Virus record (IMG/VR): IMGVR_UViG_3300018080_008436
Span: 412,249-476,248 of that record
Length of the DNA: 64,000 nt
Strand: one strand, 5' to 3'
Shown here: positions 5,512 to 61,700 of the stretch, one piece after another
Layout of the letters: every line of letters starts with the position of its first letter
How positions within the stretch are numbered: position 1 is the first letter of the stretch
Translations under genes and position numbers: made by a program
The notes under the pieces: generated by a model
Told to the model about the DNA's origin: nothing
The model's database searches: none
The model's input: the letters and a program-made list of their open reading frames with translations, nothing else

Positions 5512-5536
5512 TTCCAATTAAGGTAGTAATAATCCT
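5512..5536 (-). promoter_or_regulatory. AGG-N19-GAA putative phage late promoter
   Basis: AGG attattactaccttaattg GAATTA on the minus strand; same spacing recurs at 16 other sites. Confidence 0.7.
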
Positions 5537-5537
5537 T

Positions 5538-6488
5538 TTATGGATTTACTTCTAGCCCCATTCTTGCATATTCTTCTAGATTTATCGCTGGATTTGAGGC
5601 TTTGACTTTTACAAAAGTCGAATGGTCACATTCTTTCCACAAATCTTCTCTATCCTCTCCCCCTTCAAAGATTATCATATCATAATCTATGTGTGCGGGA
5701 GTCATCCACTCTCCATTATGCCAAATCTGGAAATCCACATCTGCATCTCTATATTGGTTCAACTTGTTGATATGGACTTCTGCATAAAGGAAATCTGGTG
5801 GTTTTTCAATTTTTAATGTATATTTATTATAGCCTGCTGGGACTATCCAAGGGTTTTGGAAAACAAAATACAAATCTTTTGAAACTTTTAACAAATCACC
5901 TCTTTGTTGAACCCAATTCCCCTTTTCATACCAATTCTTATTTTGAGAGAATGAAACAATTCCCCTTCTAACAACATTTTGCTTATCCTTATATGTCCCA
6001 TAATATCCTGATTTAGCAATGGGACTGTAAAAAGTCAGATGACTTCCATCGGCCTCCACTTGTCTTCGAGCGTTATTAAAGGCTCTAACTTCTTCATCTT
6101 CCTCTTCTTCAATAGGATCAGCTTCTTGAGGAGCGTTCGGATCAGCTTCTTGAGGAGCGTTCGGATCAGCTTCTTGAGGAGCGTTCGGATCTATCCCTGC
6201 CAGAAGTTGAGCATTTCGTTCTCTCTCCAATAATTCAAAAAGATCATCTGGTTCATCTATGTCTGGAATTTTCATTTTTCCATCTTTCAACGCATCGTCT
6301 ATTTGTTCTGGAGTTAGAGGTTTTTTATAACCTTTTATCTTCCCTTGTTTATCAAGTACTGGTTGCCTTTCTTCTTGCGTCCAGCCTATTTCTTTTAGCC
6401 TATTCTGATATTCTTTACATTCTATATAGTCTGCTCTTTGAGCCTCTTTAAGAAAAGAATAAAATTCAAATTGCTTGTACCAACTCAT
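5538..6488 (-). CDS. hypothetical protein with WY-type leader (MSWYKQ...LKEAQ) and DPNAPQEA repeats
   Basis: 316-aa ORF with AGGAGA SD. Confidence 0.75.
   Translation of the reverse strand: MSWYKQFEFYSFLKEAQRADYIECKEYQNRLKEIGWTQEERQPVLDKQGKIKGYKKPLTPEQIDDALKDGKMKIPDIDEPDDLFELLERERNAQLLAGIDPNAPQEADPNAPQEADPNAPQEADPIEEEEDEEVRAFNNARRQVEADGSHLTFYSPIAKSGYYGTYKDKQNVVRRGIVSFSQNKNWYEKGNWVQQRGDLLKVSKDLYFVFQNPWIVPAGYNKYTLKIEKPPDFLYAEVHINKLNQYRDADVDFQIWHNGEWMTPAHIDYDMIIFEGGEDREDLWKECDHSTFVKVKASNPAINLEEYARMGLEVNP
6115..6191. repeat. 3 x 24-bp perfect coding tandem repeat (DPNAPQEA)
   Basis: ggatcagcttcttgaggagcgttc x3. Confidence 0.9.
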
Positions 6489-6504
6489 AGAATCTCCTAA
6501 AAAC

Positions 6505-6915: not shown

Positions 6916-7197
6916 TTACTCCTCAACATTAGCAACATCTTTTTCAGATGGTGCTTGGCCATGTTCCAGATGCATTTTCATTGCATCACGTAGCTTGAAT
7001 TTATCTGTATATCTAACAGTAATTACTCCACCTGGATAAATGAGGTCCCAGCAGATTTCACCATCACAATCTTTATTCCTAATCATCCCTCCAGCATCAC
7101 GCCATCTGTCGATTAGTTCTTCCATTTCTCTTCTAAAAACAAAGACATCATTCTCTCTTTGTAAAAATGGCATCGCTATTTTAATAATCTTCATCAA
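6916..7197 (-). CDS. hypothetical protein with MKIIKIA leader
   Basis: 93-aa ORF; promoter motif at 7230-7254. Confidence 0.65.
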   Translation of the reverse strand: MMKIIKIAMPFLQRENDVFVFRREMEELIDRWRDAGGMIRNKDCDGEICWDLIYPGGVITVRYTDKFKLRDAMKMHLEHGQAPSEKDVANVEE

Positions 7198-7229
7198 ATA
7201 TCCCCAAATGAATTGCTTATTCTAATTTA

Positions 7230-7254
7230 TTCTTCAATATCAACCATCTAACCT
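7230..7254 (-). promoter_or_regulatory. AGG-N19-GAA putative late promoter
   Basis: AGG ttagatggttgatattgaa GAATAA. Confidence 0.65.
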
Positions 7255-7264
7255 TCATTAACAC

Positions 7265-9213: not shown

Positions 9214-9495
9214 TTAACCAAGAGTATCTTGAACTCTGTCCTCTCGTAACCAAAATTCTCCACTTCCACCAACAGGTTTCAATTTATATTGTGTCCTGCC
9301 GAACATTTTACGTTTACTAAGAACTTCAACAGGAAAGAAAACAGAAGTTGACCCTCTTCCAATTTCATAAAACTGAGCATATTTTATTTGTCCAACTTCG
9401 CTCTCATCCAGTTCCATCTCTTCTGGCACTTTTCTTTCTGGCTCTTCCTTCTGTGGCATAGGAGGAATTACTTGAGCCGCCTTCATTATTTTCAT
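9214..9495 (-). CDS. hypothetical protein with MKIMKAAQ leader
   Basis: 93-aa ORF coupled to its neighbours. Confidence 0.65.
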   Translation of the reverse strand: MKIMKAAQVIPPMPQKEEPERKVPEEMELDESEVGQIKYAQFYEIGRGSTSVFFPVEVLSKRKMFGRTQYKLKPVGGSGEFWLREDRVQDTLG

Positions 9496-9920
9496 TATCC
9501 ATCTCCTTTTATTATCTCGAATCCATTATCTAACCAACCTGCAACTGGAACTCCTTCAACAGGAGAGATGCCCATGCCAAATTTCAAAGAGACGACATCA
9601 TATCCAAGCATTCTCAAAAGAACCAAAGCTTGACTGGAAGTATGACCAACATAACAAACAAGAAGAATCTTTTTGTCTTTAGGTAATTTATCCAGGTTCT
9701 CTTTTTCTAATAAATCTAGCCAGAAAATGTTCTCTGCTCCTTCGATATGCCCTTCAGCAAAGTCTTCGGGCTTTCTTATGTCTAAGATGAAGAAGTTATC
9801 CAAGCCTTTTTCCTTCAACTCAACAGGAGTGATGTAGTTCCAAGTATCGTCTGTTTTGTCAATGAACTCTTTCAGCTTTTCCGTGAAAGTTAGATCGCAT
9901 GATATTTTTATGAGCTTCAT
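9495..9920 (-). CDS. rhodanese-domain protein with MKLIKIS leader
   Basis: ILDIRKPEDFAEGHIEGAENI; active-site loop VCYVGHTS; LRMLGY...GW. Confidence 0.85.
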   Translation of the reverse strand: MKLIKISCDLTFTEKLKEFIDKTDDTWNYITPVELKEKGLDNFFILDIRKPEDFAEGHIEGAENIFWLDLLEKENLDKLPKDKKILLVCYVGHTSSQALVLLRMLGYDVVSLKFGMGISPVEGVPVAGWLDNGFEIIKGDG

Positions 9921-9958
9921 TCACCCTTCCTTAATTCATAAGTATAGTCTTATTATAC

Positions 9959-9983
9959 TTCTAAATAAGGTGTTAGTATCCCT
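9959..9983 (-). promoter_or_regulatory. AGG-N19-GAA putative late promoter
   Basis: AGG gatactaacaccttattta GAAGTA. Confidence 0.6.
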
Positions 9984-10073
9984 ACACAAAAATACCCCCT
10001 GAGGCGAACCTAAGCAAGTCCATCGCAAGCGATATACTCGCTTTGAGACGAATCCCAAGGGGCAAATACTAAG

Positions 10074-10919: not shown

Positions 10920-11318
10920 TTAGCTGTCTTGAATTCCTTCTCTTGCTTTTTGGAGTTTGTCCATTAGCATTTGGTGTTCTTCAGGAGTAGGTTCCTCTGG
11001 AACTATGTCTTCCATTTCGTCATGCTCAAACAAATCCCAAAGCCCTTGCCTTTTTAATTGCTCTTCTATTATAGCCGCACGGAATTTATTGCATTTACCT
11101 TCGAAATAATCATCTACTTCAGCCAAATCAAGTGGTTGGTTTATAGCATCTTGGAAAATTTTTCTGAACCTGGCTAATACAGCTTCTGTACCTCCATCCC
11201 AATCTCCTTCCAAATCGTTTGCTTTTTTCATCCACCCAGCCTTCTTCCCCATATCAGTCCACTCTTTGCGAGTCATCTTAATCCTAGTTTTTCCACCAGC
11301 AGTTTTAACTATTTTCAT
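10920..11318 (-). CDS. hypothetical protein with shared N-terminal leader module
   Basis: MKIVKTAGGKTRIKMTRKEWTDMGKKAGWMKKA; AGG-N18-GAATAA at 11354-11377. Confidence 0.75.
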   Translation of the reverse strand: MKIVKTAGGKTRIKMTRKEWTDMGKKAGWMKKANDLEGDWDGGTEAVLARFRKIFQDAINQPLDLAEVDDYFEGKCNKFRAAIIEEQLKRQGLWDLFEHDEMEDIVPEEPTPEEHQMLMDKLQKAREGIQDS

Positions 11319-11397
11319 TTTAATCTCTCCATTAAGGTCTTAATTCTAATTTATTCAAAATCTTTTCTTTTGATCCTTTAATCAGCAGTAATTGTTA

Positions 11398-11925: not shown

Positions 11926-11936
11926 AACAATATTAA

Positions 11937-11961
11937 TTCAAAAATCTGTTCTTCTGACCCT
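11937..11961 (-). promoter_or_regulatory. AGG-N19-GAA putative late promoter
   Basis: AGG gtcagaagaacagattttt GAATTA, 11 nt before the ATG. Confidence 0.65.
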
Positions 11962-11971
11962 TTGTAAACAC

Positions 11972-13491: not shown

Positions 13492-13677
13492 TTTTTGTTT
13501 CTCCTTTTAGAGTTAATTTTTTGTCAATTTTCATTGACGGTTTTTTAACCAATTTGGTAAACGAAAACCAGCTTAACGCTACGATCTTTCTTCATTGATT
13601 TACTGAAAAAGTTGCCGTCATCTTATTAATCAAAACTGCAAACATTGAATTACTTACCAACTTGTTATATCCCTTTG

Positions 13678-13702
13678 TTCTATATTAATAAGGTGATTTC
13701 CT
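13678..13702 (-). promoter_or_regulatory. AGG-N19-GAA putative late promoter for the decoration/MCP operon
   Basis: AGG aaatcaccttattaatata GAACAA. Confidence 0.65.
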
Positions 13703-13713
13703 GCTTACTATAC

Positions 13714-13780: not shown

Positions 13781-14014
13781 TTATTCTTTTAGAGACTTTC
13801 TTCTTTGCAATTCTTTTTTCATAGCATCTCTGGTTTTATCTAACTCTTCTAAGTCATATCCCCAATCGATACCATAATTTTCCTGTTCAATAATTTGATT
13901 ATCATAATAAAGCCAAGCCAACTCATTTTCTAATTCTTCTGTTGGAATTTCTTCTATTGGTTCTTTAGATATAATGTATTTATGTTCTTTGTTAGACACT
14001 CTTATTAATTTCAT
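13781..14014 (-). CDS. small hypothetical protein with MKLIRVS leader
   Basis: 77-aa ORF; start overlaps the upstream gene's end. Confidence 0.6.
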   Translation of the reverse strand: MKLIRVSNKEHKYIISKEPIEEIPTEELENELAWLYYDNQIIEQENYGIDWGYDLEELDKTRDAMKKELQRRKSLKE

Positions 14015-14262: not shown

Positions 14263-14306
14263 AACAATTAATTCACTAATATAAAAAGAACTTCCTTTAA
14301 GAATAC

Positions 14307-23859: not shown

Positions 23860-23945
23860 TTGGTAATCTCCAACAAAAAAGATCTATTATCATTTTTTCT
23901 CTTTTCTAAAAAAATGACACAGATCCCTTTTTTATGATAAAAATG

Positions 23946-26168: not shown

Positions 26169-26209
26169 GCACACATTCCTGATTTAGATTTTTTTTATTA
26201 TACAAAATC

Positions 26210-28574: not shown

Positions 28575-28612
28575 GTTAATATCATCCTGTAATTAATGAC
28601 TTTTCGAACTTA

Positions 28613-28681
28613 TTCGTTAAAAATAAACAAAAGTCCTATTCCCATGTCATACTTAGTTCAACAAATATTATACACAAACCT
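28613..28681 (-). promoter_or_regulatory. two tandem AGG-N19-GAA putative late promoters
   Basis: 28613-28637 (AGG acttttgtttatttttaac GAATAA) and 28657-28681 (AGG tttgtgtataatatttgtt GAACTA). Confidence 0.65.
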
Positions 28682-28692
28682 TCATAAAACAC

Positions 28693-31853: not shown

Positions 31854-32057
31854 TTATTCTAAATAAGAGTCCTTTTTCCCTACATCTTTCTTGTCATATT
31901 TGTCTTGGCAGGTTTGCCATGCATCTTGAGGACTGTCCCCTTCATCAAGACACTCTTTCTGACAGTCCATCTTTTTCCTTTCTGGACGCATCAATTCTTG
32001 AGCACCTTCATAAAAGGCTTTCTTTTTTAAATGCCTTTTCAAATTGAAAATAGCCAT
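31854..32057 (-). CDS. small hypothetical protein
   Basis: 67 aa; MAIFNLKRHLKKKAF N-terminus. Confidence 0.55.
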   Translation of the reverse strand: MAIFNLKRHLKKKAFYEGAQELMRPERKKMDCQKECLDEGDSPQDAWQTCQDKYDKKDVGKKDSYLE

Positions 32058-33678: not shown

Positions 33679-36063
33679 TTACTCTCCAAAATCCAATATT
33701 TTATCTAATTCATACTTCTTAAAAAGTTCCTGGGCTTCCTCTTCATTGAGTGACTCTATCTTTGCCTTCGCAAACTGCAAGAAGTCAACAGAATACTTTT
33801 CCAAAAGAACGGGAGCGTATTTTCCAATAGCTTCCTCTAATTCACTATCAATATCAAGACCAAGCTTGATTGACAAATACAACGCTCTCAATATAATGAA
33901 TGGGTTGAATGACAATACATCATCTGCATCCATGACCGTTTCGATATAATTATCTCCATTAAAAGGAGTGATGAACGATCCAGTGTAAGGGTTATATCCT
34001 CTAGCATTAATAGTGAAATCCTTGTTGCAAATATCATGCAATACATGGCTGGAAGAATCAAGATCCTGTTTTTTCATCCATCTCTCGATAGTTGGGATCT
34101 TTTGTCCTCCATTGAAACAAATCTTCACGCCTTTGTGATTAAAACAAAAACATCTAGTTGCTGGATCAATCTCAGAGACCTGTTCTCCCAATTCTTCAGC
34201 CAACAAACTTCCGAATTTATGGCAGTTTTGGGATGAATCACTTGTAAATTCAAGTTCCTCAACTTCTGGAGATCTGTTCCCAAAAGATTTCTCTCTTGCA
34301 TAAGAACCGATAGCATAAACATCTTTGATATCGTATTCATGAGCCACACTCTTTGCGGCATCCATAATGCAACTAATAGCATCTTCAAGCGTTGGTCTGC
34401 AACCAACAACCTTTGACATAATCTCTCTTAGTTGTTCATCATTGTTCTGAATAGCATCTTCGACTTTTTCAATTTCTTCACTACCAACTCCCCTATGAAT
34501 CCAGCAGGAGTATATCTCTTCTCCATCGGACTCTCCCAAAGAAAACATATCGACTCCAATAGGACTGCGCCCCATTGACTTTTCAATAACTGACAACATA
34601 TCTTCACTACAAACAATCCTAGTTGCCTTCATATCGCCCCTAAGAATGATTGATCGTATTTTTCTCAACATATCAACAATATGTCCAAGCCCACCCGAAG
34701 CAAAACGTTTTGCAGGATGAGTGTTGCTTAAGTCTCTTGTTGAATCAAACCAACTCTCTGGTTTGAACCTTGGCTCGATCCATCTGTAATAAAACCCCTT
34801 GATGTCATATGTTGGGTTATATCTAGGTTGTGACTTTATCCAGTCCTCTTCTTCTGAAAAACATTCATCTCTGTCATCCCAGGCCATGACTCTGTCACCT
34901 AACCCAGGAATAGTTGATCCATCAGAAATTTCGAGATTATTGTACCACCCAAAAACTGTCGCCATCTTTGTCATCTTTGATGCTTGCTTTAAAGGCATCA
35001 TCAATGGTTGTGGTCTAGTATCTTCCAGAAGATCTTCAGTGATTCTATATCCAGTATCGTCTTTGAGCCTGTCTTTGTCAAGCAATTCTTCAAAAATGAG
35101 ATCAGGATCTAATTCCCAATCACCTTCAGTAAATTTCCTCAACTGAACTTCATAGATGTCATGTTCTGGAGATAGGTCTGGAGGGAGTGGAGCCTGATAC
35201 TGTCTGCCAAGCATTTCTTCGATTGCTCGATTTTGATATTGATGGGCGATCATACCCCAATCTGGTTGGGCCTGGAAATTTGCTCCATGATCACCATATC
35301 TTCCTGACAAATCAGATCCTGAGGGAGGATAGAATGGAAAGTGGCTTTGAGCTTCTTTATACCAATTATTTGAGGCTCCTTGCCTTAAACTTAGTTCACC
35401 CTCTATGCTGTATTTCTGCTGAATCTCTCTCATGGCAGATTCAAGTAATGCTGTCTCAACTTGAGTTGGACCTGCTTCGTCTTCTGCCCCTTTAGCATGA
35501 GTGGCTTCGTGAGCCATTGTAGCGGCCATGTGAGCTATCATAAGATCTTGTCTTAGCTCTGCATGCATTTCTGGTGGAACGATGTCCTGAAGGTTCCTAA
35601 AGGATTGCTCCATCTCATTACGAGTGTCTGCTACATTCAGTCCTAGAACTGATCCTCCTTTACTTTCTAGATCAGCATATACTTGCTGGATTTCATTACG
35701 GATAGTTTCTTGGTCTTTCTCTTCTTTAGTGTCATACGCTCGAAGCATTCCATCTTCTTCGACAATTTCATAACCTCTTGATTCAAGTCTTTTTTGAAGT
35801 TCTTGGGTTTTGACTGCCCTATCTAGTGACGGAACATAAACTCCATAAACACCAGCTTTCGCGAAGTTGAACATATAAACAATATTCTGCAAAAGATTTG
35901 AGTCGAATCGATTGACTAAGTCAACTGATTTCTGGGCATCGCCAAATTGGGAAGAGATGTTGGAGATGTTAACACTTGGGCTTCCGATCAAACTACCTTT
36001 ATACTCTGGAGCATCACCAGAGTAATACCCTCCGTAGTCTTGAGATACTTTTATGATTTTCAT
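33679..36063 (-). CDS. multidomain protein: MKIIKVSQ leader, HExxH domain and degenerate CCA/poly(A)-polymerase domain
   Basis: MAHEATH; internal NNWYKEAQ; VYAIGSYARE...ELEF...DICNKDFTINA...NPFIILRAL; AGG-N19-GAATAA at 36100-36124. Confidence 0.7.
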   Translation of the reverse strand: MKIIKVSQDYGGYYSGDAPEYKGSLIGSPSVNISNISSQFGDAQKSVDLVNRFDSNLLQNIVYMFNFAKAGVYGVYVPSLDRAVKTQELQKRLESRGYEIVEEDGMLRAYDTKEEKDQETIRNEIQQVYADLESKGGSVLGLNVADTRNEMEQSFRNLQDIVPPEMHAELRQDLMIAHMAATMAHEATHAKGAEDEAGPTQVETALLESAMREIQQKYSIEGELSLRQGASNNWYKEAQSHFPFYPPSGSDLSGRYGDHGANFQAQPDWGMIAHQYQNRAIEEMLGRQYQAPLPPDLSPEHDIYEVQLRKFTEGDWELDPDLIFEELLDKDRLKDDTGYRITEDLLEDTRPQPLMMPLKQASKMTKMATVFGWYNNLEISDGSTIPGLGDRVMAWDDRDECFSEEEDWIKSQPRYNPTYDIKGFYYRWIEPRFKPESWFDSTRDLSNTHPAKRFASGGLGHIVDMLRKIRSIILRGDMKATRIVCSEDMLSVIEKSMGRSPIGVDMFSLGESDGEEIYSCWIHRGVGSEEIEKVEDAIQNNDEQLREIMSKVVGCRPTLEDAISCIMDAAKSVAHEYDIKDVYAIGSYAREKSFGNRSPEVEELEFTSDSSQNCHKFGSLLAEELGEQVSEIDPATRCFCFNHKGVKICFNGGQKIPTIERWMKKQDLDSSSHVLHDICNKDFTINARGYNPYTGSFITPFNGDNYIETVMDADDVLSFNPFIILRALYLSIKLGLDIDSELEEAIGKYAPVLLEKYSVDFLQFAKAKIESLNEEEAQELFKKYELDKILDFGE

Positions 36064-36134
36064 ATTTTAACTCAGGAAAATTGTACAATTGCATTTTTAT
36101 TCTCACTTTTCCGTTGAATGTCCTATTTGGGCAC

Positions 36135-38082: not shown

Positions 38083-38140
38083 TTTTGATACCTAAATTAA
38101 GTGTACTCTAACTTATTCAAAAAAAGTACACTTTGAACCT

Positions 38141-38971
38141 TTAGACTTCAATAAAGGCATCTCCAAGTTGATCTTCTTCATCAACTTCATCTGGAATGAA
38201 GGCATTTTCCACATCTTCATCTACAGGTTCTTCTTCATCGATAAAAGCATCTTCTACATCATCTCCGAAGATTTCATCAACATCTAGGAAATTTGCATCT
38301 GGTCTATCACCGAAAGCATTGTTTTTCATTTCAACCTGGGTTGCCTTGCCATTGCCAGCGCCAATAACAGCGGTTGTTCCCATTCTTTCAGATGGATCTA
38401 ACAAAGATTCATCGATGGGTGTTTCTTCCTCAACCTCTTCCCCTGCCTCTTCTGCATCAAGCTTTGCGGCGGCTTTCATGGATGCCTCACAACGAGGCTC
38501 ATTTTCATCAATTTCCCCATTCATCTTGTGAACCATCTCTTGAGTCTTAGGCCCTACATCAGTCATTACAACCACTTTCTCTTTTGGTTTTTCTTCCTTT
38601 TCAGCCTTCTTTTCAGTTTTCTTGCTTTTGCTCTTGCCTCTTCTTGACTTAGGCTTCCTTTTGGGCTTCTCTTCTTCAGCCTTTTCTTCAGGCTTTTCTT
38701 CAGGCTTTTCTTGGGGAGGTTCAGTGGTCAGAATCTCTTCTACCTTTTCTGCTTCTTTAGGTTTTTCTTCGATCACTTCCATACGAATCAAACCATAGTT
38801 GGCAACTTGTCTGAGTTCACTTGCTTGCGCTTCGTTTTCAACTTCGATATTTAAAGCGTAACTACATCCATCACATTTTTTAGGATTGGGGTCATATTTA
38901 CCCCTAAGCATCATGCCAATAGTGTTGAAGGAAATTGTAGCTTCTGTCAAACCATATACGTTAACTTTCAT
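38141..38971 (-). CDS. hypothetical protein with Lys/Glu-rich low-complexity segments
   Basis: 276-aa ORF; TGTATAAT upstream at ~39005-39012. Confidence 0.7.
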   Translation of the reverse strand: MKVNVYGLTEATISFNTIGMMLRGKYDPNPKKCDGCSYALNIEVENEAQASELRQVANYGLIRMEVIEEKPKEAEKVEEILTTEPPQEKPEEKPEEKAEEEKPKRKPKSRRGKSKSKKTEKKAEKEEKPKEKVVVMTDVGPKTQEMVHKMNGEIDENEPRCEASMKAAAKLDAEEAGEEVEEETPIDESLLDPSERMGTTAVIGAGNGKATQVEMKNNAFGDRPDANFLDVDEIFGDDVEDAFIDEEEPVDEDVENAFIPDEVDEEDQLGDAFIEV

Positions 38972-40150: not shown

Positions 40151-40200
40151 TCTCCTGAAGAATATTTCTTATTTGTTCTTCTTCTATTATAAAAAATCCT

Positions 40201-42036
40201 CTAAAATCTCATCCTAACAGTTACAGGTTCTGGAAGAGCAGGGTTCAGTCCATCAGTAGCAGAAGAAACAGCCCCTACTAAGCAATCAACTACATCATCT
40301 GTCTTCACATCTGCATTTTTATCTGGCAGAAGAGAAATTCCTCTTGCAATTCTTTTGAATTTTAAGTGTTGCATCTCTGCTAACATATATGAAGCATGTC
40401 CATCATCATCATAAAGATAAATTTCAGGATTTGGTTGATACTCCATCATCATCTTCATATTTCTATATAATTTCTGTTTAACACTTCTGTTATATTGAAT
40501 CTTTTGACAATTTACTCCATGACTCCTCAAAAACTGCAAACTGTGTACAGACTGAAAGTCATCATAAGTAACTCTCAATGGTCTAAAGATTTTGCAAATA
40601 GTTAGAACATCTCTATCAATCTCATGGAATTGTAATCCAATACCTGGAACTGGTTTCCAGATCCATACGCCAGCTAATTCAACCATCCATCTCTTTTCCC
40701 CCTGATTGTTTCTATATTTCTTAGCGGCAATCAAAACCATACTGAAGTTATTTCCGCCATTGGCTGGATCAACATGAGCATAATAATTGTATCCTGGTGC
40801 TGGTTTGGCATGAGGGCCAAGATCTGCCCTTACACATCTTTCAAGCAATCCTTCCTCAAAATAGTTACCATAAATACCGCCACTAGCCCATTGAGCGCCA
40901 TACTCAATAGCAAACATTTCTGGGTTACTCTCTCTATCACCAACCATCTCTTTGTTATAAAAATCAATATCATCATTTACACACCAAGTTGGCAACTGAA
41001 ACGATAAGATAGAATCATCTTCTAATGATCTTCGATACATATCATAGAAAATACCCATCCTATTGTTCGGTGATGATATCATCACTATTCGAGCCGCATT
41101 ATATTTGTAGAATTTAGATAATGATGGCTTTAATCTGTTGAAGAAATAGGTCCCTGTTACCTTACCACTCTCATCATAGAATGCAATCTCGTCAAACAGA
41201 ATAAGAATAGCACTATATCCAGCAAGTGAGTCTGGATTACTATGACCACAAAGAAGTAGAATAGATCCCGCAACTTCAATGTCAACTCCCTGACTTTTCT
41301 TTTCTAAGTCAGAGTCAGTATACAAACGAATCTCCGAAGAAATTGATTTAGCGATTCGTCCTTTGAAAAAAGGAGAGTTTCTAATTCTAGCCTGAATCTG
41401 TCCAAACAAACGTCCAGCCTGAGATTGTGACAAGGCAACATTAATAATTGCAATTTCATCATCACTAGGTAGATTATAGTAGCTATGGGGATTACCCTCA
41501 TTAATAACTAGTAACTTGTACGCTTCATACACAGTTATGATTGAAGCCATCAAGGTTTTACTTCCACGTCTACCTAAGACAAGATGCAACATACTAAAAT
41601 ATTCAGGTCGTCTGTCTTCTGGCTTCTTCCCCTCATTTTCATCATTCCCCTTGGCCTTCTCATCGTGGAACCTGTCCATCTCGATCATTTTTTTGATAAC
41701 CTCTTTGATGTTCCTTTCATAAGTAACACCTTCAAGAGTCTCATCTTCTTCATTACCGTAAAGCCACTCCCACTCTTCTTTATTGAGATGAAGGTCTTCA
41801 TTTCCTATAGTGTTCTTGTAGAAGCACTTAAGGATAACTCTTTGGGAAGTCCAGAGATCAAGCTGATTCTCTTCTGATGGTAAGTTTAGGTAGTCTGGAT
41901 GATCACAAAACGTTATGATATCGACTATCTCTTTGTAACCCTTGTTCTTTTTCAGAATCGGGTTTTTGGTATTAATCTGAAGTATTGCTTCTTCAAGTGG
42001 ATTAATAGCTTTCTGCTTCTTCTGGCGACTCGACAT
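40201..42036 (-). CDS. terL: terminase large subunit
   Basis: Walker A GRRGSKT, Walker B ILFDEIAF, motif III ISSP, EYGAQW, RNase H-like HVDPA and C-terminal DDVVD. Confidence 0.9.
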   Translation of the reverse strand: MSSRQKKQKAINPLEEAILQINTKNPILKKNKGYKEIVDIITFCDHPDYLNLPSEENQLDLWTSQRVILKCFYKNTIGNEDLHLNKEEWEWLYGNEEDETLEGVTYERNIKEVIKKMIEMDRFHDEKAKGNDENEGKKPEDRRPEYFSMLHLVLGRRGSKTLMASIITVYEAYKLLVINEGNPHSYYNLPSDDEIAIINVALSQSQAGRLFGQIQARIRNSPFFKGRIAKSISSEIRLYTDSDLEKKSQGVDIEVAGSILLLCGHSNPDSLAGYSAILILFDEIAFYDESGKVTGTYFFNRLKPSLSKFYKYNAARIVMISSPNNRMGIFYDMYRRSLEDDSILSFQLPTWCVNDDIDFYNKEMVGDRESNPEMFAIEYGAQWASGGIYGNYFEEGLLERCVRADLGPHAKPAPGYNYYAHVDPANGGNNFSMVLIAAKKYRNNQGEKRWMVELAGVWIWKPVPGIGLQFHEIDRDVLTICKIFRPLRVTYDDFQSVHSLQFLRSHGVNCQKIQYNRSVKQKLYRNMKMMMEYQPNPEIYLYDDDGHASYMLAEMQHLKFKRIARGISLLPDKNADVKTDDVVDCLVGAVSSATDGLNPALPEPVTVRMRF

Positions 42037-42853
42037 AATATTCCTCCAATATATAAACACAACCATTGTCTGATGGACAAAAGGTCAGAATTTTATTTCC
42101 AACCTTATATATTTCAAACAAATGAGTCGCATCTCCTTCAGAGGAAAGCATATGCACAGTATTGTCACTTAAAAAGAAAAGTTTGTTCTTGACATAATAT
42201 ATGTCTTTTAGGTCTTTGCAGTCATCGATAATTGTGTACGTTGAGTTTTTTCGTATCCCCCTTAAGCAATTGTTACCACTGTCTGCAAAACAGACAGTTT
42301 TTCCCATTATTGCAACTCCAGTTGGTTTAGAAATCCTCGTATTTTTTAAATTTGATATTGAGAATCCAGCCTTACCACAACCTATAAGTGGAAAGGCGTT
42401 CTCCTCATTCATTATAAAGCATCTGTGACAATTTGTAGTGCTCCAGATGACTTGATTTTCTAATGAAGTTACATAAGTCCTTGAGTCGCTTCTTCCAAGG
42501 ACTTTTCTTCTAAATTGTTTAGCACTGTTTTTTGAGATCAAATTCTCAAAATCCATCAACTCCAAATCGACTTTGTGAATTCGGCTACCACCTTCTGAAA
42601 CTATATATAAACAATCATAACTGGAATTATAGCATATCGAACTGAAAGTTGAAAAGTCTGGCTTCTCAGTATATGTGAGTTCATAACGCCAATCAGGATT
42701 GCAGTCGCCATTATTCATCTTTCCTATGCCATCATCATGTAGGAAAAACAGATTATCCCCAACACAACAAAAATCCTTGATCTCGAAGTTGATCTCGAAA
42801 TTTCGTTGTTTTCGGGTGGTAAGGTTCTTTTCTGTAAGTTTATAGATCATCAA
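42002..42853 (-). CDS. NHL-repeat/beta-propeller-like protein
   Basis: KPTGVAI...FADSGNNCLR NHL-like repeat. Confidence 0.55.
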   Translation of the reverse strand: MMIYKLTEKNLTTRKQRNFEINFEIKDFCCVGDNLFFLHDDGIGKMNNGDCNPDWRYELTYTEKPDFSTFSSICYNSSYDCLYIVSEGGSRIHKVDLELMDFENLISKNSAKQFRRKVLGRSDSRTYVTSLENQVIWSTTNCHRCFIMNEENAFPLIGCGKAGFSISNLKNTRISKPTGVAIMGKTVCFADSGNNCLRGIRKNSTYTIIDDCKDLKDIYYVKNKLFFLSDNTVHMLSSEGDATHLFEIYKVGNKILTFCPSDNGCVYILEEYYVESPEEAESY

Positions 42854-44218: not shown

Positions 44219-44266
44219 AAAAAAGGCTGTATCGTGTTTATTTCCACAAATACAGCCTTTTTACCT
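44219..44266 (-). terminator. terminator after RNR, overlapping an AGG-N19-GAA promoter
   Basis: AAAAAGGCTGTAT...ATACAGCCTTTTT. Confidence 0.7.
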
Positions 44267-44275
44267 TTTATATGA

Positions 44276-50184: not shown

Positions 50185-50189
50185 GTGAA

Positions 50190-50256
50190 AGGTTTTTCTC
50201 GATTTTAGTTAGAATTATTGGTAAGTTATAGTTCAAAAAAGTCAAGTTAAAAACCT
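50190..50256. promoter_or_regulatory. face-to-face AGG-N19-GAA promoter pair serving divergent genes
   Basis: Plus strand 50190-50214 (AGG tttttctcgattttagtta GAATTA); minus strand 50232-50256. Confidence 0.65.
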
Positions 50257-50267
50257 GTATCTGAAAA

Positions 50268-55756: not shown

Positions 55757-56392
55757 CTATTTTACGACTGCTGATGAAATCCTCAGTTCATTACCTTTAT
55801 TATTGATTCTACCCTCTATACTTAGGACTACTTCGTCTGTTGGAAGATTTGCTAATGGCGTAAGAGTTACAATAGAAGGAAGATTATTAGTCTTACCTGT
55901 AGCTTCGACAATTACATCTCCAGTATCTTCTCTTACAATCCTAACATCATATGAATCGTTTGATTTAGTCTGCCATGAAACTAACTTAATTACTGTTGGG
56001 ACTCCAAGCGTATCAATTCCCTCGAATATAAAACTTGCTATAACACTATAGTTTGTTGAAGTTGTTCTGGTGTAAGGTTTTCTCCCAGATGGAAAAATAA
56101 CATTAACATCGGACATTTTTTGCTCAGCAACAACTGATTGGTTCTTAAATAACTGAATTAAACCAGTTTGAGGCGACTTAAGGGTTATTATAAGTTCGTT
56201 CTTTTTATTGCCAGGTGAGGTCATAACACTTTCTATAAGGTCTTCTCTAGATTTCCCATTAAGAATTACTTTTGCTGTTAGATCTTTGTATCCAAGGTTA
56301 TGAGTCACTGTTATAACTGATTCAGGTGATAGAGTTCCTTCCTCTTCATCATATCCAAAGATATGCCTGTATACCAATACATCTTTAGCCAT
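55757..56392 (-). CDS. hypothetical virion (fibre-associated) protein
   Basis: ITVTHNLG motif, typical of phage fibre/baseplate proteins. Confidence 0.6.
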   Translation of the reverse strand: MAKDVLVYRHIFGYDEEEGTLSPESVITVTHNLGYKDLTAKVILNGKSREDLIESVMTSPGNKKNELIITLKSPQTGLIQLFKNQSVVAEQKMSDVNVIFPSGRKPYTRTTSTNYSVIASFIFEGIDTLGVPTVIKLVSWQTKSNDSYDVRIVREDTGDVIVEATGKTNNLPSIVTLTPLANLPTDEVVLSIEGRINNKGNELRISSAVVK

Positions 56393-58698
56393 TACAATTT
56401 ACCTCCATGAGTCCATTTTACTCCACTTAATCCGAGTTCAACCACTCCTATTTGTGAAGAAGACGTTCCTAAATCATCTAACTCAAATCTAATAAAAACC
56501 ATGTCTCCAGGATAATACCCAGATATATAAAATGGGCCAAATTCAACAAACTGAATTTTAGTTGTGTCAACATCGTCAACTTTTACAGAATCTGACTGAG
56601 CGGCAGTTGCCGTTTTTGATTCTGTATTGACTAAAGTCCTTGCAACAGGAGTTATCCCTCCAGATGGATCTGCTTCCAAGACACCTTGCACTTCAACAAC
56701 TTTAAAGCCAATAGTCATATCTATATCTAAGCCAGATCCTGTATTAACAGTATCTAGGAAAGTTAAATCAACAAAAATAGGTAAGCTTGTGTCCATCCCC
56801 TTAGGTATGCTGAATTGATAGTATATTGCATCCCCCGCGTCATTTAACAATGAGTTTGGACATTGATGTGTCCATCCGTCAGGCTCAGTTCCCAAGCCAA
56901 TTGCAGTCGTCCAAGCCGCAACCCCACCAGATTCTCCAAAAACATTCCCAGCGGCGTTTAGAGATACCCTGAATCTAGATCTTCCATGATAAGTGTTCGT
57001 TCCATCTGGATTAGCTTCAAATCTATTGCAACTTAATTTAAATTGTTCGAAAACTGGAGCAGTTGTAACAGCAGTATCAATTCTAATTCTTGTCCAATAT
57101 AGATTTTTACTATCAATTGTTTTCTTTGTCCAGTCAGTACCAGTAACATCTTCAGTTAGTCCAAATCTAATATGTTCACTTGAGTTTGCTCTGATAAATA
57201 CTTCGTCAGCATAATTGTAAAATTCAGATGATTCTGTTGACTGAACTGCGAACTCTGTCCAGGCACTGCCATTCCAATACTCAAAAACAAAACTTTTAGG
57301 AGTTACTTCAACAGCGGCTGTGGTTTGTTTGACTTTTATTCCCCAATGTTTAACCAAATCTGTTGCAGTTTGTCTTTGTGAACCAATTAAAATTGTATGA
57401 TTCGCCGCAGTACCTTGGAATGAAAAAGTACTGCCTGATGAAGAAGACGCATCCTCTGATTCATCTACGAAATTACCACCATCAGTAGTTGATGACGCTG
57501 TGCTGTCTGTAGTTAAAACAACCATTCCTGAGGTATAAGAGTCACCTTCTCCAGCAATAAGTTCAGATCCACGATCTGGTCGTCCAACTGCGAGTTCTCC
57601 AGAGAATTTAAAGCCTTCATCACCTTCAAAATCATCTTGAATAAATACAATTTCATTAGCATATCCTGCTGGAAATTGAGCTAACCCAAAATTAGCGTCC
57701 AAACCAATAATGTGAATCTCCACATCAAGACTTTCTACCAAAAAATCAAGACTTGACGATGTACGGAATTCACACGACGAAATAGTAATCTTACCTGTCC
57801 CATCGGCTCTCATCGCGTTGGTGCAATTTCTTATCGTCATGGAAGATATTATTAACGATGAATCTGTTCCTAAGATATAAACCCCATCAGTTGCTCCATC
57901 AATTTCACCAGCACGAACGGTAAGAGTTGCTCCATCATCACACTTTATCCCTGTAGTAACATTAGTTGACACACACTCAAAAGTTACAAAATCAATTTTT
58001 GATGTAGAACCATTTGCGTGAAAAACATTTGTTATGCTACAAGCAACTGGCACAACAAGGCCAGTACCTCTTATTGTTCCACTATTCGCATAAATAAGGT
58101 TGGTTACTGAACCAACTGGCGCTGTAGTTAAGTTAATAACAACAACGCTTGAACTCGAAGTACATTCAATACCATTCGCACAATTATAAATAACACAGTC
58201 TTTAACTATAGATGACGGAACACCTGGAGTTGCCATTAAGAATGCTGTTCCTGAAGTTGCTCCAGTCAAAGAAAATCCTGCCAAAGTGTTATATCCAGTA
58301 GATGTTACTATTGTATCACTTGCGCTTGATGCTGAAATAGTAGTTGTAAATGGACCAGCTATGGCTCGTATATCAACATAGTTCTTCATTGCTATGGGAG
58401 TTTCTGTGTAAATTCCAGGTGCAACTGCAATTGTATAGCTATTGGTTGGACCATTGTCTGTAATGTTTGATAAGGCCCCATTTATAGTTAAATATGGGCT
58501 ATGTGCATCACCGTCACCTTCTGTATCGCTACCCGTTTTGGATACATATAAAACGTTTGAAAGTGGAACAAGAAGATTTTCTCTTTTGATATATTGTGAT
58601 TCATAACTTCCACCACCAAGGTTTTTTGAAACAGCGACTAAGTCATCTGCTTCTAAAGTGGTCATTTCTGAAAGTTGTGATAATGATTTGTCAGCCAT
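56392..58698 (-). CDS. tail spike/fibre with right-handed beta-helix
   Basis: LYVSKTGSD..GDG..SPYLTI..AL...IAVAPGIYTE cap followed by beta-helix repeats; AGG-N19-GAA at 58729-58753. Confidence 0.7.
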   Translation of the reverse strand: MADKSLSQLSEMTTLEADDLVAVSKNLGGGSYESQYIKRENLLVPLSNVLYVSKTGSDTEGDGDAHSPYLTINGALSNITDNGPTNSYTIAVAPGIYTETPIAMKNYVDIRAIAGPFTTTISASSASDTIVTSTGYNTLAGFSLTGATSGTAFLMATPGVPSSIVKDCVIYNCANGIECTSSSSVVVINLTTAPVGSVTNLIYANSGTIRGTGLVVPVACSITNVFHANGSTSKIDFVTFECVSTNVTTGIKCDDGATLTVRAGEIDGATDGVYILGTDSSLIISSMTIRNCTNAMRADGTGKITISSCEFRTSSSLDFLVESLDVEIHIIGLDANFGLAQFPAGYANEIVFIQDDFEGDEGFKFSGELAVGRPDRGSELIAGEGDSYTSGMVVLTTDSTASSTTDGGNFVDESEDASSSSGSTFSFQGTAANHTILIGSQRQTATDLVKHWGIKVKQTTAAVEVTPKSFVFEYWNGSAWTEFAVQSTESSEFYNYADEVFIRANSSEHIRFGLTEDVTGTDWTKKTIDSKNLYWTRIRIDTAVTTAPVFEQFKLSCNRFEANPDGTNTYHGRSRFRVSLNAAGNVFGESGGVAAWTTAIGLGTEPDGWTHQCPNSLLNDAGDAIYYQFSIPKGMDTSLPIFVDLTFLDTVNTGSGLDIDMTIGFKVVEVQGVLEADPSGGITPVARTLVNTESKTATAAQSDSVKVDDVDTTKIQFVEFGPFYISGYYPGDMVFIRFELDDLGTSSSQIGVVELGLSGVKWTHGGKL

Positions 58699-58751
58699 AA
58701 TTTTTCCTCGGCATTAATTATTTTCTATTTCTATATTTATGTTAAATAATC

Positions 58752-61700
58752 CTATTGGCTTTCGCTAGAACTTTCGCTAAACATTTCAGATGAAGAGGAA
58801 GATGACTCACCTTGAGATGATGTTGATGAGCTTTCGGAGTATAACTCACTAGAGGTACTTGAGCTTTCGGAGTATAACTCACTAGAGGTACTTGAACTTT
58901 CAGAGAATCCTTCAGATGATGTACTTGAACTATCGGTACTTTGTGAGTATTGTTCACTAGATGTACTTGAACTATCAGTACTCTCTGTTAATCTACGGAA
59001 AGTTCCATCCTCCCAAATTGCGTTTCCTAAATCACCATCCCAGACAAAGTTATCTCCATTCTCTAGTATCCATTGTTCGTCATTAATGGATGAAGATGAA
59101 CTTTCTGAACCAGAGCTTGTGGAGAATGGACAACTTTCTTCAACAAATCCAGGGTCGCCAAATCCCCTGCCTTTTGTCCAGACATTACCTTGATTAATTG
59201 GATAAATTTGGTTTGGGTCACTATAGAACATCCAAAGATTTATGTCATTAGTAACTGTATCGTTAACGGCCCAATAAAAATTACCACCTGATTCTCCATA
59301 AAATAGATATAAGTCATTTGTATAACGTTTATATATTGGATACCCATTAAATGTTTGTATAGTTTTGTAATACGGCCCATTAACATCTTGAGCAGGGACA
59401 GAGCTTGAACTTGATTCTGAAGAAAATTGTTCACTTGATGTTGAGGAACTCTGAGAAATACTGCTAGATGATTCAGATTTTGATGAATCGCTTACTGAAC
59501 TTTCAGAAAGTGAGCTTGAACTTTCAGATTGAGAGCTAGAAGACTCACTAGTAAATCCTCCAGAACTTGTACTACTAGAGTCTTTAGAACTTGAACTACT
59601 TTCTCCAACTCCATCAGCAAGGGTTGAAAGTCTAATGGCAGATAAACCAATTTGGCTTGCTACCGTTAAATCTGTTCCACCTGCCTGACCTTGGAGAGAT
59701 GTCCTTAACTCAACTTCCTCCCCCGCTGTCAATTCAAGGACAGTGTGGGCGTTAAAACCACCATTCCAAGTGTCTGCTCCCCCCTGAGAACCACGTTTGT
59801 AATTACCATGACCCCCAATATTACTTTCGACATCATCAACAAACCAATCCGCGCCAAATGTAAGTCTTGTCCCACTAGTTGAAACTGTATCATCTGACAA
59901 TCCATTCCCCATAAACAAATAATCATCAGTAATATTAACTTGAACTTCAGCATTAGAGTTTTGAGTATAGGAGTTTGTGTCAATTTGATCAACATCTCTA
60001 GCAATATTAAGAATGGTACTTGCTCCCACATCCTGTCCACCAGTACTATCATGAGTAATAATGGTTTCTGTATGCCATGGTACTTCCATAATTTCCAGAC
60101 TAGATGAGTTAACAACTCTGGCCATACCTGTTCCATCAATGTCTGCGTTACCTCTTTGGATTTGCAAGATAAGATCTTGATTTGCAGTTGTATTATCGAC
60201 TAGAAAAAGCGCATGAGCCACACCTGGACCTGAACTATTACCTCTTTCATAGACATATGAATAACTACCCTCAATTGCTGTACCACCCAAAGTTGTCCTT
60301 AATATTCTTTGTGTTCTACTAGATCCAGGTCCAAACTTGAAAGAATATTTGACAAGATATTTTGCGACCTTTTTAAGTCGAACGGTTGTTGCATTTTGTT
60401 GTTCGATAACATCTGTGTCAGTTTCGTCTTTAGTATTAAATGTAATGTCCTGCCATACTGTTCCAACGTAAGCTGTAGTATCTATATCGTCAAAGTATTG
60501 TCCATATGCGACTTTGTCTTCACTTGGCAATTTTACCAACATTAATGAAGTTTTAGAGTTCGATAACACATCAGATGCACTTATAAGTACGGGTTGCCAT
60601 TCAACTCGGACATCTTGTCCTCTAACTACATCTATAAAAACCGCTCCAGATGTAAAGCCTTCATCATTCTCATTATTTCTGGCATAGCCATATCCATAAC
60701 CACCATCTTGAACTACACCATTAACCAAAACTCTTGATTGAATTGAATGTCTGCCATCAGATGTTGATGTTGATCTAATCTCATACATGAGTAGGTATTT
60801 ACCATTGCTATCTATAGTGATGTCTGTATTGTTTACGTTTTTGTTATAAATGCTGTCTTCTCTAACAGTGTTATTAAATTGAACTCCTTCCCATACCCCA
60901 ATGTTTCCTATTGTTTGGGTATTATTTGTGTCTTGGTAAATTGCAATAAGTCCAGTATTTTCTACATCAGACTCACTACTGGAACTTGTGATTCCCTCAC
61001 TACTGGAACTATTGGAACTGTCAGAACTAAATTCATCGTTAAGCCATTTATCAGCGAGATATGCTTCTACTTCATATCTCTCTGATGTAGACAGAACCCT
61101 ATCATAGAGAAGTATTTCAGCGACTAAACCTTCAGTATATGAATCATTATTTCTGTTTCTTCCAACAGCATAAAAATCAAACAACGGATTGAAAACGGAA
61201 CCAAGAGTTTGATCTAAGGTTTTCAATCCATTTATATAACCTTTTAAACTATTGGCACCATCAGCAGTAATTGATAAAACGGTTGGCAATCTATTCCCAG
61301 AAGATTGCTCAATGGAATATTCTGTAGCTCCTACTCTAATTCCTAAAGTATCTGATGCATTATAATTGACTTGAAAGGAAGTGTCTGGAGTTTCTGAAGA
61401 ATCATTACAAAACCAACTATCAAATTCAGATTGAGTTTCTGTTGATTTATAAACCAAGAAAAAAGTCATTGGGCCTTGCCAATTAACGATATCTCTGTCT
61501 AAATAATCGTTATCACCATCAAACTCAACAGTGTTCCTTCCATTCATTGAGTTCAAGTTGTAAACTGGTTGATTTGCAGGGGTTGTCTGCTCCACATTAA
61601 GTATATTACCAGATTTGTCAGCCCAAGCAGATACATTACTTCCGTTCAAGGTAATAGTGGATGCATCATCTGCATCTAGCCATAACCTCAATCCATTGGA

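What the first reader, a model, noticed from the sequence alone, without database searches (positions are those of the whole stretch)
5512..58753. Genome-wide bipartite promoter motif AGG-N19-GAA(T/C/A)
Seen with exactly 19-nt spacing upstream of starts at 5512, 7230, 9959, 11937, 13678, 14272, 23904, 28613, 28657, 31857, 36100, 38116, 40176, 44242, 50232 and 58729 (minus) and 50190 (plus), plus an N18 variant at 11354. All are oriented with the downstream gene and several sit just past a terminator. Downstream genes are mostly head, fibre, lysozyme or leader-tagged genes, whereas clpP, 51448, 38971, 10709 and 7947 have TATAAT-type elements. The motif does not resemble sigma70 or the T4 late TATAAATA. 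Inference: the late promoter of a phage-encoded alternative sigma factor located outside this window.
Basis: partly seen in the sequence, partly recalled or inferred. Interest (0 to 1): 0.75.

Follow-up and report, generated by a model that had tools for sequence, protein, structure and literature searches.

The report
SigH-type late promoters of a megaphage
The AGG-N19-GAA motif is a real, rigidly spaced promoter class of a roughly 0.5-Mb uncultivated phage; it matches the known sigma-H (SigH) promoter consensus, and the phage encodes its own SigH-like sigma factor outside the window, so this is a new example of a familiar phage strategy.

Summary
All 18 listed sites exist. Raw counts are at chance (37 vs 33.8), but position is not. 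In the window, 19 AGG-N19-GAA sites lie 5-90 nt upstream of a same-strand start, against 2.6 at other spacings (P 4e-11). An unbiased dyad scan of the 476-kb genome ranks this dyad just behind a ribosome-binding-site dyad.

The fuller consensus is RnAGG-N19-GAAnWA. The A three bases after GAA is present in 33 of 34 sites. GAA lies 31-39 nt before the start codon in most sites.

The motif equals the published SigH promoter (-35 AGGA, -10 GAAT, 17-18 nt spacer). The genome encodes four sigma factors. One of them (280 aa, about 250 kb upstream of the window) hits only SigH models and the one SigH structure in the PDB. No RNA polymerase gene was found.

Relatives keep both the sigma and the motif. 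In six syntenic late regions, N19 gives 44 sites against 1-8 at other spacings. At one aligned orthologous promoter AAAGG and GAA are invariant while the spacer diverges.

Downstream operons hold portal, terminase, protease and tail-tube genes. Timing and transcription start sites could not be tested because no RNA runs were listed.

Verdict: a phage SigH-like sigma plus its cognate promoters; a new member of a known kind.

The parts
5509..5538 (-). SigH-type promoter (RnAGG-N19-GAAnWA) upstream of the 585-aa gene 3718-5475
   Evidence: Half-site score 21.7 bits; GAA ends 37 nt before the ATG.
7227..7256 (-). SigH-type promoter upstream of the 92-aa gene 6916-7194, just past terminator 7291-7272
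   Evidence: 18.3 bits, distance 36 nt; terminator.
9956..9985 (-). SigH-type promoter upstream of the 141-aa gene 9495-9920; the -10 reads GAAGTA
   Evidence: 21.5 bits, distance 39 nt.
11351..11379 (-). SigH-type promoter, N18 spacer variant, upstream of the 132-aa gene 10920-11318
   Evidence: 18.2 bits with the same half-site matrices at N18, distance 36 nt. A G003 gene with partial similarity (49% identity over 57 aa) carries an N19 site.
11934..11963 (-). SigH-type promoter just past terminator 12004-11977; the ATG of gene 11398-11925 lies only 12 nt after GAA, so the mRNA may be nearly leaderless
   Evidence: 17.0 bits; terminator; sequence.
13675..13704 (-). SigH-type promoter; the nearest called gene is 187 nt away, but an uncalled short ORF starts at an ATG about 33 nt after GAA
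   Evidence: 17.5 bits; sequence read. The small ORF is my reading and was not tested.
14269..14298 (-). SigH-type promoter; the ATG of the 83-aa gene 14011-14262 begins 10 nt after GAA, exactly at the predicted +1, so the mRNA is a leaderless candidate
   Evidence: 20.2 bits; sequence; the purine-rich position 10 nt after GAA is.
23901..23930 (-). SigH-type promoter for the operon of the 1305-aa, 833-aa (prohead-protease-like) and 957-aa genes; it sits inside a terminator hairpin whose loop holds the -10
   Evidence: 20.1 bits; hairpin -20 kcal/mol, z -7.6; PHROG protease hit.
28610..28639 (-). Proximal member of a tandem SigH-type promoter pair for the operon of the 342-aa gene, the 443-aa gene and the portal (23946-26174)
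   Evidence: 18.1 bits, distance 39 nt. Both tandem sites are conserved in three relatives. Portal hit.
28654..28683 (-). Distal member of the tandem pair; a TGTATAAT element lies in its spacer
   Evidence: 20.7 bits; alignment A3; TGTATAAT at 28667-28674.
31854..31883 (-). SigH-type promoter upstream of the 224-aa gene 31117-31791
   Evidence: 20.1 bits, distance 66 nt; N19 sites at the syntenic position in L078-L080.
33713..33742 (-).
   Evidence: 14.9 bits, distance 40 nt. N19 sites at the syntenic position in L078, L079, L080 and L082. It lies in coding sequence, so conservation is weaker evidence here.
36097..36126 (-). SigH-type promoter upstream of the 794-aa gene 33679-36063
   Evidence: 15.2 bits, distance 37 nt; N19 sites at the syntenic position in L078-L080 and L083.
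38113..38142 (-). SigH-type promoter upstream of the trypsin-like protease gene 37021-38082; a hairpin spans the -10
   Evidence: 20.0 bits, distance 34 nt. In the 7-sequence orthologous alignment AAAGG and GAA are invariant and the spacer has diverged. Hairpin.
40173..40202 (-). SigH-type promoter upstream of the 310-aa gene 39209-40141
   Evidence: 14.5 bits, distance 35 nt; N19 sites at the syntenic position in L078, L081 and L083.
42110..42139 (-).
   Evidence: 17.2 bits; conserved in L078-L080; terminase hit. It lies in coding sequence, so this is weaker evidence.
44239..44268 (-). SigH-type promoter for the operon of the 455-aa gene, the 283-aa gene and the terminase; it sits inside the terminator hairpin that follows the ribonucleotide reductase gene
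   Evidence: 18.3 bits, distance 35 nt; hairpin -21.4 kcal/mol, z -7.0, followed by a T-run; an N19 site at the syntenic position in all six relatives.
50188..50217 (+). SigH-type promoter on the plus strand for gene 50268-51044; it overlaps the minus-strand promoter at 50229-50258
   Evidence: 21.0 bits; sequence.
50229..50258 (-). SigH-type promoter upstream of the 155-aa gene 49717-50184
   Evidence: 20.6 bits, distance 48 nt.
58726..58755 (-). SigH-type promoter upstream of the 768-aa gene 56392-58698 (tail-protein and beta-helix hits)
   Evidence: 21.3 bits, distance 31 nt; family hits.

Best explanation
The motif is the promoter of a phage-encoded SigH-family sigma factor. The proposed anatomy is a -35 element RnAGG(wwt), a 16-nt spacer, a -10 hexamer GAAnWA, and a purine +1 seven bases after the hexamer (10 nt after GAA). 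A leader of about 25 nt carrying the ribosome-binding site follows.

The proposed mechanism has three steps:
1. Host RNA polymerase with its housekeeping sigma transcribes the early region from TTGACA/TGnTAT-type promoters. That region includes an operon holding a DNA polymerase III clamp-loader gene and the 280-aa SigH-like sigma gene (genome 163344-164186, about 250 kb upstream of the window).
2. The sigma binds host core polymerase, since the phage has no detectable polymerase of its own.
3. The holoenzyme initiates at about 45-55 RnAGG-N19-GAAnWA sites. These lie mostly in the 220-306 kb and 394-476 kb parts of the genome and head the head, packaging and tail operons of the window.

Shown here: the reality of the motif, its spacing, orientation and position; its identity with the SigH consensus; the presence and conservation of the SigH-like sigma; and motif conservation in relatives. 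Inferred: which sigma reads the motif, the transcription start sites, and late timing.
For: - Statistics: as given in the observation check.
- Match to a known class: SigH promoters are described as -35 AGGA and -10 GAAT with 17-18 nt spacers (PMC12456013), which equals AGG-N18/19-GAAT. N19 dominates here, with a few N18 sites.
- Cognate factor: four sigma genes are present. The one at 163344-164186 has SigH-specific models as its top five NCBIfam hits (E 2e-25 to 2e-17), with the next family at 3e-8. Its only PDB sequence hit is 3MZY, 'RNA polymerase sigma-H factor'. It aligns over most of its length with a verified Listeria SigH at 32% identity, E 6e-24.
- Its operon is preceded by TTGTCA-N16-TATATT and TGGTATAAT elements and by a clamp-loader gene.
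- No RNA polymerase beta subunit or T7-like polymerase was found.
- Co-conservation: four IMG/VR contigs carry the sigma at 50-57% identity with the same clamp-loader synteny. The other sigmas are at most 33% identical or absent there. Those contigs show N19 enrichment near gene starts: 38 against 13.8, and 16 against 2.5 for the extended pattern.
- Six syntenic late regions (protease 48-74% identical) give 44 N19 sites against 1-8 at other spacings. The A after GAA is present in 41 of 44.
- Orthologous promoter alignments keep AAAGG and GAA while the spacer diverges.
- Gene content downstream: portal, terminase, prohead-protease-like and virion protein, and tail tube.
- The early-type TTGAC promoters are confined to 0-350 kb, complementary to the motif.
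Against: - There is no transcript data. No RNA run was listed, so start sites, timing and sigma dependence are untested.
- The sigma scores below the curated equivalog cut-offs of every SigH model. It carries an N-terminal extension and a roughly 16-aa insertion in region 4, so its specificity could differ from bacterial SigH.
- The phage -10 differs from GAAT. The fourth base is T in only 15 of 34 sites, while an A two bases further on is nearly invariant.
- The motif also precedes non-structural genes (caspase-like peptidase, homing endonucleases, a glycosyltransferase), so 'late' may be too narrow.
- Three other phage sigmas exist.
- The host is unknown.
Confidence: 0.7

Rival explanations
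1. The promoters are read by the host's own SigH, not by the phage protein. Late genes would then be coupled to the host's transition or stationary state, and the phage sigma would have another role, such as manipulating host sporulation or competence.
For: The motif matches the bacterial SigH consensus. Phage 'sporulation' sigma homologues are usually read as host-manipulating genes. The nearest bacterial clusters to the sigma in the protein atlas are from Bacillota.
Against: The phage carries its own SigH-like gene, conserved at 50-57% identity across relatives that also keep the motif. The -10 departs from GAAT toward GAAnWA, which suggests a shifted specificity. Making about 50 structural-gene promoters depend on a host stationary-phase factor would be risky for a lytic programme. 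The host phylum is unknown.
Confidence: 0.12
2. One of the other three phage sigma factors reads the motif. These are RpoD/RpoS/RpoH-like proteins at genome 72647-73462, 73471-74319 and 132956-133786.
For: They are full-length sigma factors with regions 2 and 4. The third one lies in an operon headed by a motif site at 135668, so a cascade exists in some form.
Against: Their best models are the RpoS, RpoD and RpoH groups, and from general knowledge those groups read TTGACA/TATAAT-like or heat-shock-type promoters, not AGG/GAAT. They are poorly conserved or absent in relatives that keep the motif (26-33% identity or no hit). The SigH-like sigma is 50-57% identical in the same relatives.
Confidence: 0.08
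3. The motif is not a promoter. It would be the binding site of a regulator, or an RNA-level element in 5' leaders.
For: No transcript data exist. Several sites overlap hairpins.
Against: The motif has two short blocks at a rigid 19-nt distance with an unconserved spacer. It is strictly oriented with the gene and sits at a fixed distance upstream of start codons, leaving room for a leader. It coincides with a known -35/-10 consensus. Only 12 of 45 sites fold better than shuffles, so structure is not a shared feature.
Confidence: 0.05

Closest known systems
SigH (sigma-H, Spo0H) regulon promoters of Bacillota (Bacillus subtilis, Clostridioides difficile, Sporomusa)
   Same: The -35 AGG(A), the -10 GAA(T) and the spacing are the same: AGGA-N17/18-GAAT in PMC12456013 equals AGG-N18/19-GAAT. 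From my memory of Britton et al. 2002, not re-read here, the B. subtilis consensus also has a purine two bases before AGG; that feature is seen here.
   Different: The fourth base of each block is weak here (A after AGG in 14 of 34 sites; T after GAA in 15 of 34). An A three bases after GAA is nearly invariant (33 of 34, and 41 of 44 in relatives). The promoters lie in a phage genome and head virion genes, not transition-state or sporulation genes.
SigH family sigma factors (NCBIfam PRK08295.x, TIGR02859; PDB 3MZY)
   Same: SigH-specific models are the best hits, regions 2 and 4 are covered, and the protein aligns with Listeria SigH at 32% identity.
   Different: Scores fall below the equivalog cut-offs. 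The protein is 280 aa against about 200, with an N-terminal extension and a roughly 16-aa insertion in region 4. Homologues are found only in phage-like metagenomic contigs and in no GTDB species genome.
Bacillus phage SPO1 sigma cascade (gp28 middle, gp33/34 late) and T4 gp55 late promoters
   Same: The logic is the same: a phage-encoded sigma redirects host core polymerase to a phage-specific promoter class for later genes. In a published tree, gp28 groups with sigD, sigH and sigI (bioRxiv 10.1101/2021.11.12.468384). From memory, the gp28 -35 element is AGGAGA.
   Different: The consensus differs. From memory, SPO1 middle promoters have a TTTnTTT -10, and T4 late promoters are TATAAATA with no -35. 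No SPO1 or T4 relative appeared in the tblastn search of phage genomes with this sigma.
'Sporulation-specific sigma factor' genes annotated in phage G and other phages
   Same: [quoted passage not shown] Phage G has a gene with that label (PMC12484599).
   Different: In the literature these genes are read as tools to manipulate host sporulation. Here the gene is tied to about 50 phage promoters, which points to a role in the phage's own programme. The phage G gene was not detected as a relative at E 1e-3.

Membership tests
SigH-type promoter | -35 element AGGA | tested here: met
   AGG was the selection criterion, so its invariance is by construction. Independent support comes from R at -2 in 33 of 34 sites. 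The fourth base is only weakly A (14 of 34 here; 23 of 38 in distant relatives).
SigH-type promoter | -10 element GAAT | tested here: inconclusive
   GAA was selected for. T follows in 15 of 34 sites, A in 12 and C in 5. Instead the pattern is GAAnWA, with A in 33 of 34. This is a variant of the published -10.
SigH-type promoter | 17-18 nt between AGGA and GAAT | tested here: met
   With the half-site matrices, N19 (= 18 nt between the tetramers) gives 56 sites, N18 (= 17 nt) gives 8, and almost no intergenic sites appear at N17, N20 or N21.
SigH-type promoter | Transcription starts about 7 nt after the -10 and depends on SigH | not testable with these tools
   No RNA run was listed. The only indirect hints are a purine-rich position 10 nt after GAA (30 of 34; 34 of 44 in relatives) and a fixed distance to start codons.
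SigH family sigma factor | Scores above the curated cut-off of a SigH equivalog model | tested here: not met
   The best score is 89.5 bits against a cut-off of 212 (PRK08295.1-4); TIGR02859 gives 68.7 against 294.8. The protein is therefore SigH-like, not an orthologue by NCBI's rule.
SigH family sigma factor | Closer to SigH than to any other sigma group | tested here: met
   The top five NCBIfam hits are all SigH models (E 2e-25 to 2e-17), and the next is the generic sigma-70/ECF model at 3e-8. Three relatives behave the same way. The only PDB hit is a sigma-H factor. The alignment with a verified Listeria SigH gives E 6e-24.
Phage sigma-driven late transcription (SPO1 or T4 type) | Phage-encoded sigma and no phage RNA polymerase | tested here: met
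   Four sigma genes are present. PF00562 and PF00940 give no match. The T7-type search had no positive control, and very divergent polymerases could be missed.
Phage sigma-driven late transcription (SPO1 or T4 type) | The promoter class heads virion and packaging genes | tested here: met
   Portal, terminase, prohead-protease-like, virion-protein and tail-tube genes lie downstream of sites. Some non-structural genes do too.
Phage sigma-driven late transcription (SPO1 or T4 type) | Expression late in infection | not testable with these tools
   The phage is uncultivated, from sediment and seawater metagenomes, and has no RNA data.

The most novel reading that the evidence does not exclude
A whole clade of uncultivated huge phages has recruited a SigH-family sigma factor as the master switch of its structural-gene programme. 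The clade is seen as hundreds of metagenomic homologues, on contigs up to 525 kb. If so, the 'sporulation-specific sigma factor' label on such phage genes is a misreading. The promoters are also built into compact modules: in some, the terminator hairpin of the upstream operon carries the next promoter's -10 in its loop, and some late mRNAs would be leaderless.
Probability: 0.55. Interest if true: 0.55.

Novelty: new member of a known kind. Interest (0 to 1): 0.45.

Why it matters
It gives a sequence-only reading of the transcription programme of a phage of about 0.5 Mb that cannot be grown. There is an early class (TTGACA/TGnTAT-type) and a second class of about 50 SigH-type promoters tied to a phage sigma factor.

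That allows operon and timing annotation in genomes where most proteins have no known family. It also offers a testable promoter and sigma pair. Finally, it cautions against reading phage 'sporulation sigma' genes as host-manipulation genes by default.

Tried and rejected
- A raw motif count in the window shows no enrichment. This measure is uninformative, not evidence against the motif.
- A megablast search of phage genomes found no match.
- Searches for RNA runs listed none; only DNA runs from sediment and seawater were found. Start-site mapping with read laying was therefore not attempted.
- The search for related loci with single proteins returned only other assemblies of the same phage.
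- Raw pattern counts in four related contigs were not clearly above the backwards control. Enrichment appeared only once position relative to gene starts was used.
- Promoter checks upstream of similar genes in those distant contigs were mostly negative, because operon structure differs and the contigs mainly cover the replication region.
- A scan of GTDB genomes for the sigma found nothing, so it gave no host clue.
- Britton 2002 and Saujet 2011 are not in the paper library. Literature searches for a described phage SigH-like late system found none in the held library.
- The chance explanation is rejected. A repeat or duplication origin is rejected because spacer columns carry almost no information.
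Full report
**Context.** The window is the last 64 kb (412249-476248) of a 476,248-bp IMG/VR virus record. That record was cut from a 524,692-bp sediment metagenome contig. About 83% of genes are on the minus strand and the standard genetic code fits, with 92% of the sequence coding. The genome carries 59 tRNAs and a tmRNA. No close relative exists among deposited phage genomes.

- In the window, 19 AGG-N19-GAA sites end 5-90 nt upstream of a same-strand start. The mean at the other spacings N12-27 (N18 left out) is 2.6 (P 4.5e-11). Antisense, reversed and swapped controls give 2, 2 and 6.
- I called genes across the whole genome and ran an unbiased 3mer-Nx-3mer scan over 290 upstream regions. 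AGG-N19-GAA was found in 49 regions against 9.4 at other spacings (P 7e-20). It ranks second, just behind the ribosome-binding-site dyad GAG-N8-ATG (P 4e-20).
The spacer columns carry almost no information.
- The pattern RnAGG-N19-GAAnWA has 40 intergenic matches at N19 and 1-3 at N16-18 and N20-22.
- Half-site matrices give 56 sites at N19 and 8 at N18 (5 of them intergenic), and almost no intergenic sites at other spacings.
- GAA lies 31-39 nt before the start codon in 28 of 51 upstream sites.
- A purine-rich position 10 nt after GAA fits a +1 seven bases after a GAAnWA hexamer.

**What is it?** The motif is the published SigH promoter: -35 AGGA, -10 GAAT, 17-18 nt spacer (PMC12456013). That equals AGG-N18/19-GAAT.
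- The genome has four sigma-70-family genes, all outside the window.
- Three of them resemble RpoD, RpoS or RpoH.
- The fourth (163344-164186, 280 aa) has SigH models as its top five NCBIfam hits (E 2e-25 to 2e-17), followed by the generic model at 3e-8. All scores are below the equivalog cut-offs.
- Its only sequence match in the PDB is 3MZY, a sigma-H factor.
- It aligns with a Listeria ORF at 32% identity, E 6e-24. I verified that ORF as SigH (396 bits against a cut-off of 212).
- The phage protein has an N-terminal extension and a roughly 16-aa insertion in region 4.
- The gene follows a DNA polymerase III clamp-loader gene. The operon is preceded by TTGTCA-N16-TATATT and TGGTATAAT elements.
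- No RNA polymerase beta subunit or T7-like polymerase was detected. The sigma therefore has to work with host core enzyme.

**Two promoter classes.** A class with consensus CTTGACAT-N14-TGCTATGTT lies mainly in the first 155 kb. TTGAC-type sites occur only in 0-350 kb. The SigH-type sites concentrate at 200-306 kb and 394-476 kb. In the window a TGTATAAT extended -10 class is also present, with 8 matches against 2.7 expected.

**Downstream genes.** Most have no family hit. Operons headed by the motif include:
- the portal (23946-26174);
- the large terminase (40201-42066);
- a prohead-protease-like protein (17439-19940);
- a virion structural protein next door (58752-61835);
- a trypsin-like protease (37021-38082);
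- outside the window, a tail-tube protein.

A caspase-like peptidase, homing endonucleases and a glycosyltransferase are also preceded by the motif. The class is therefore 'middle/late' rather than strictly structural.

**Relatives.** The sigma has more than 400 metagenomic homologues, many on long phage-like contigs. None was found in GTDB species genomes.
- Four IMG/VR contigs carry it at 50-57% identity with the same clamp-loader synteny. The other sigmas are 26-33% identical or absent there.
- In those four contigs, AGG-N19-GAA near gene starts totals 38 against 13.8 at other spacings (P 6e-8). The extended pattern gives 16 against 2.5.
- Using homologues of the protease, I fetched six syntenic late regions at 48-74% protein identity.
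- These have 44 N19 sites upstream of called starts, against 1-8 at any other spacing. The A after GAA is present in 41 of 44.
- The orthologous protease promoter keeps AAAGG and GAA invariant in seven sequences while the spacer and leader diverge.
- The tandem pair upstream of the 342-aa gene is conserved in three relatives.

**Mechanism and confidence.** The best reading is a sigma cascade. Host housekeeping holoenzyme makes the SigH-like sigma early. The sigma then directs host core polymerase to about 50 RnAGG-N19-GAAnWA promoters.
- That this is a sigma-type promoter class: about 0.9.
- That the SigH-like protein is its factor: about 0.7.
- Rivals: host SigH (0.12), another phage sigma (0.08), a non-promoter element (0.05).

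Timing and start sites are inferred, because no RNA run was listed.

**Known or new?** Phage-encoded sigmas with their own promoter class are classic (SPO1, T4), and the SigH consensus is known. The held literature describes phage 'sporulation sigma' genes as host-manipulation genes. It contains no SigH-like phage late system. This is a new member of a known kind, with a modest variant in the -10 element.

Noticed in passing
window 23901-23930, 38113-38142, 44239-44268; genome G000 88905, 237926, 399847: At these sites the promoter sits inside a strong hairpin, followed in most cases by a T-run, that looks like the terminator of the upstream operon. AGG lies at or just before the 5' foot of the stem, the -10 GAAnWA lies in the loop, and the predicted +1 falls in the 3' arm. 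A transcript started there would lack the 5' arm and so would not terminate itself. z-scores are -2.0 for window 38116 and -5 to -8 for the other five.
   Followed up: partly
window 14262 and 11925 (start codons); G000 290657: Three genes have their ATG only 10-12 nt after GAA, with no room for a ribosome-binding site. At 14262 and at G000 290657 the A of the ATG falls exactly on the predicted +1, which suggests leaderless late mRNAs.
   Followed up: partly
window 3718-36063 (nine genes, for example starts at 5475, 7194, 9920, 11318, 14262, 36063): Eleven genes in the genome begin MK[ILV][ILV][KR]. Nine of them are in this part of the window, and six lie directly behind a SigH-type promoter. 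The meaning is unknown; it could be a shared N-terminal signal or a paralogous N-terminus.
   Followed up: partly
window 358, 7966, 10744, 26197, 28667, 36165, 39005 (minus strand), 51343 (plus strand): TGTATAAT extended -10 elements occur 8 times against 2.7 expected, mostly upstream of gene starts. One precedes the portal gene, and one lies inside the spacer of the distal SigH-type promoter at 28654-28683.
   Followed up: partly
G000 1-155 kb (outside the window): There is a second, early-type promoter class with consensus CTTGACAT-N14-TGCTATGTT: 21 sites, 15 of them in the first 155 kb and none beyond 308 kb.
   Followed up: partly
window 50188-50258: Two SigH-type promoters on opposite strands share one 83-nt intergenic region. 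Their -10 elements face each other and the predicted starts are about 2 nt apart, so polymerase binding should be mutually exclusive.
   Followed up: no
G000 409748-409822 (2.4 kb before the window) and the whole genome: A tRNA with anticodon CUA (called tRNA-Pyl by ARAGORN, a potential amber suppressor) lies just upstream of the structural region. The genome has 59 tRNAs and a tmRNA. TAG is still used as a stop codon by 76 of 460 called genes, and frames are open under code 11.
   Followed up: no
G000 135668 and 131933 (outside the window): SigH-type sites head the operon that contains the third, RpoD-like phage sigma gene (132956-133786), together with a caspase-like peptidase and a RuvB-like ATPase. 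This hints at a further step in a sigma cascade.
   Followed up: no
window 23946-26174 and 44276-47779: The portal protein carries a C-terminal DUF559/endonuclease-like domain (residues about 660-730). The ribonucleotide reductase gene contains an intein with a LAGLIDADG domain. In relatives the terminase gene carries inteins instead.
   Followed up: no
whole record: IMG/VR classes the record as a provirus, but it is a 476-kb piece of a 524,692-bp contig. By my coordinate arithmetic from the contig range, the first ~48 kb of that contig were trimmed. The window abuts the contig end, so the true genome is probably about 525 kb.
   Followed up: no
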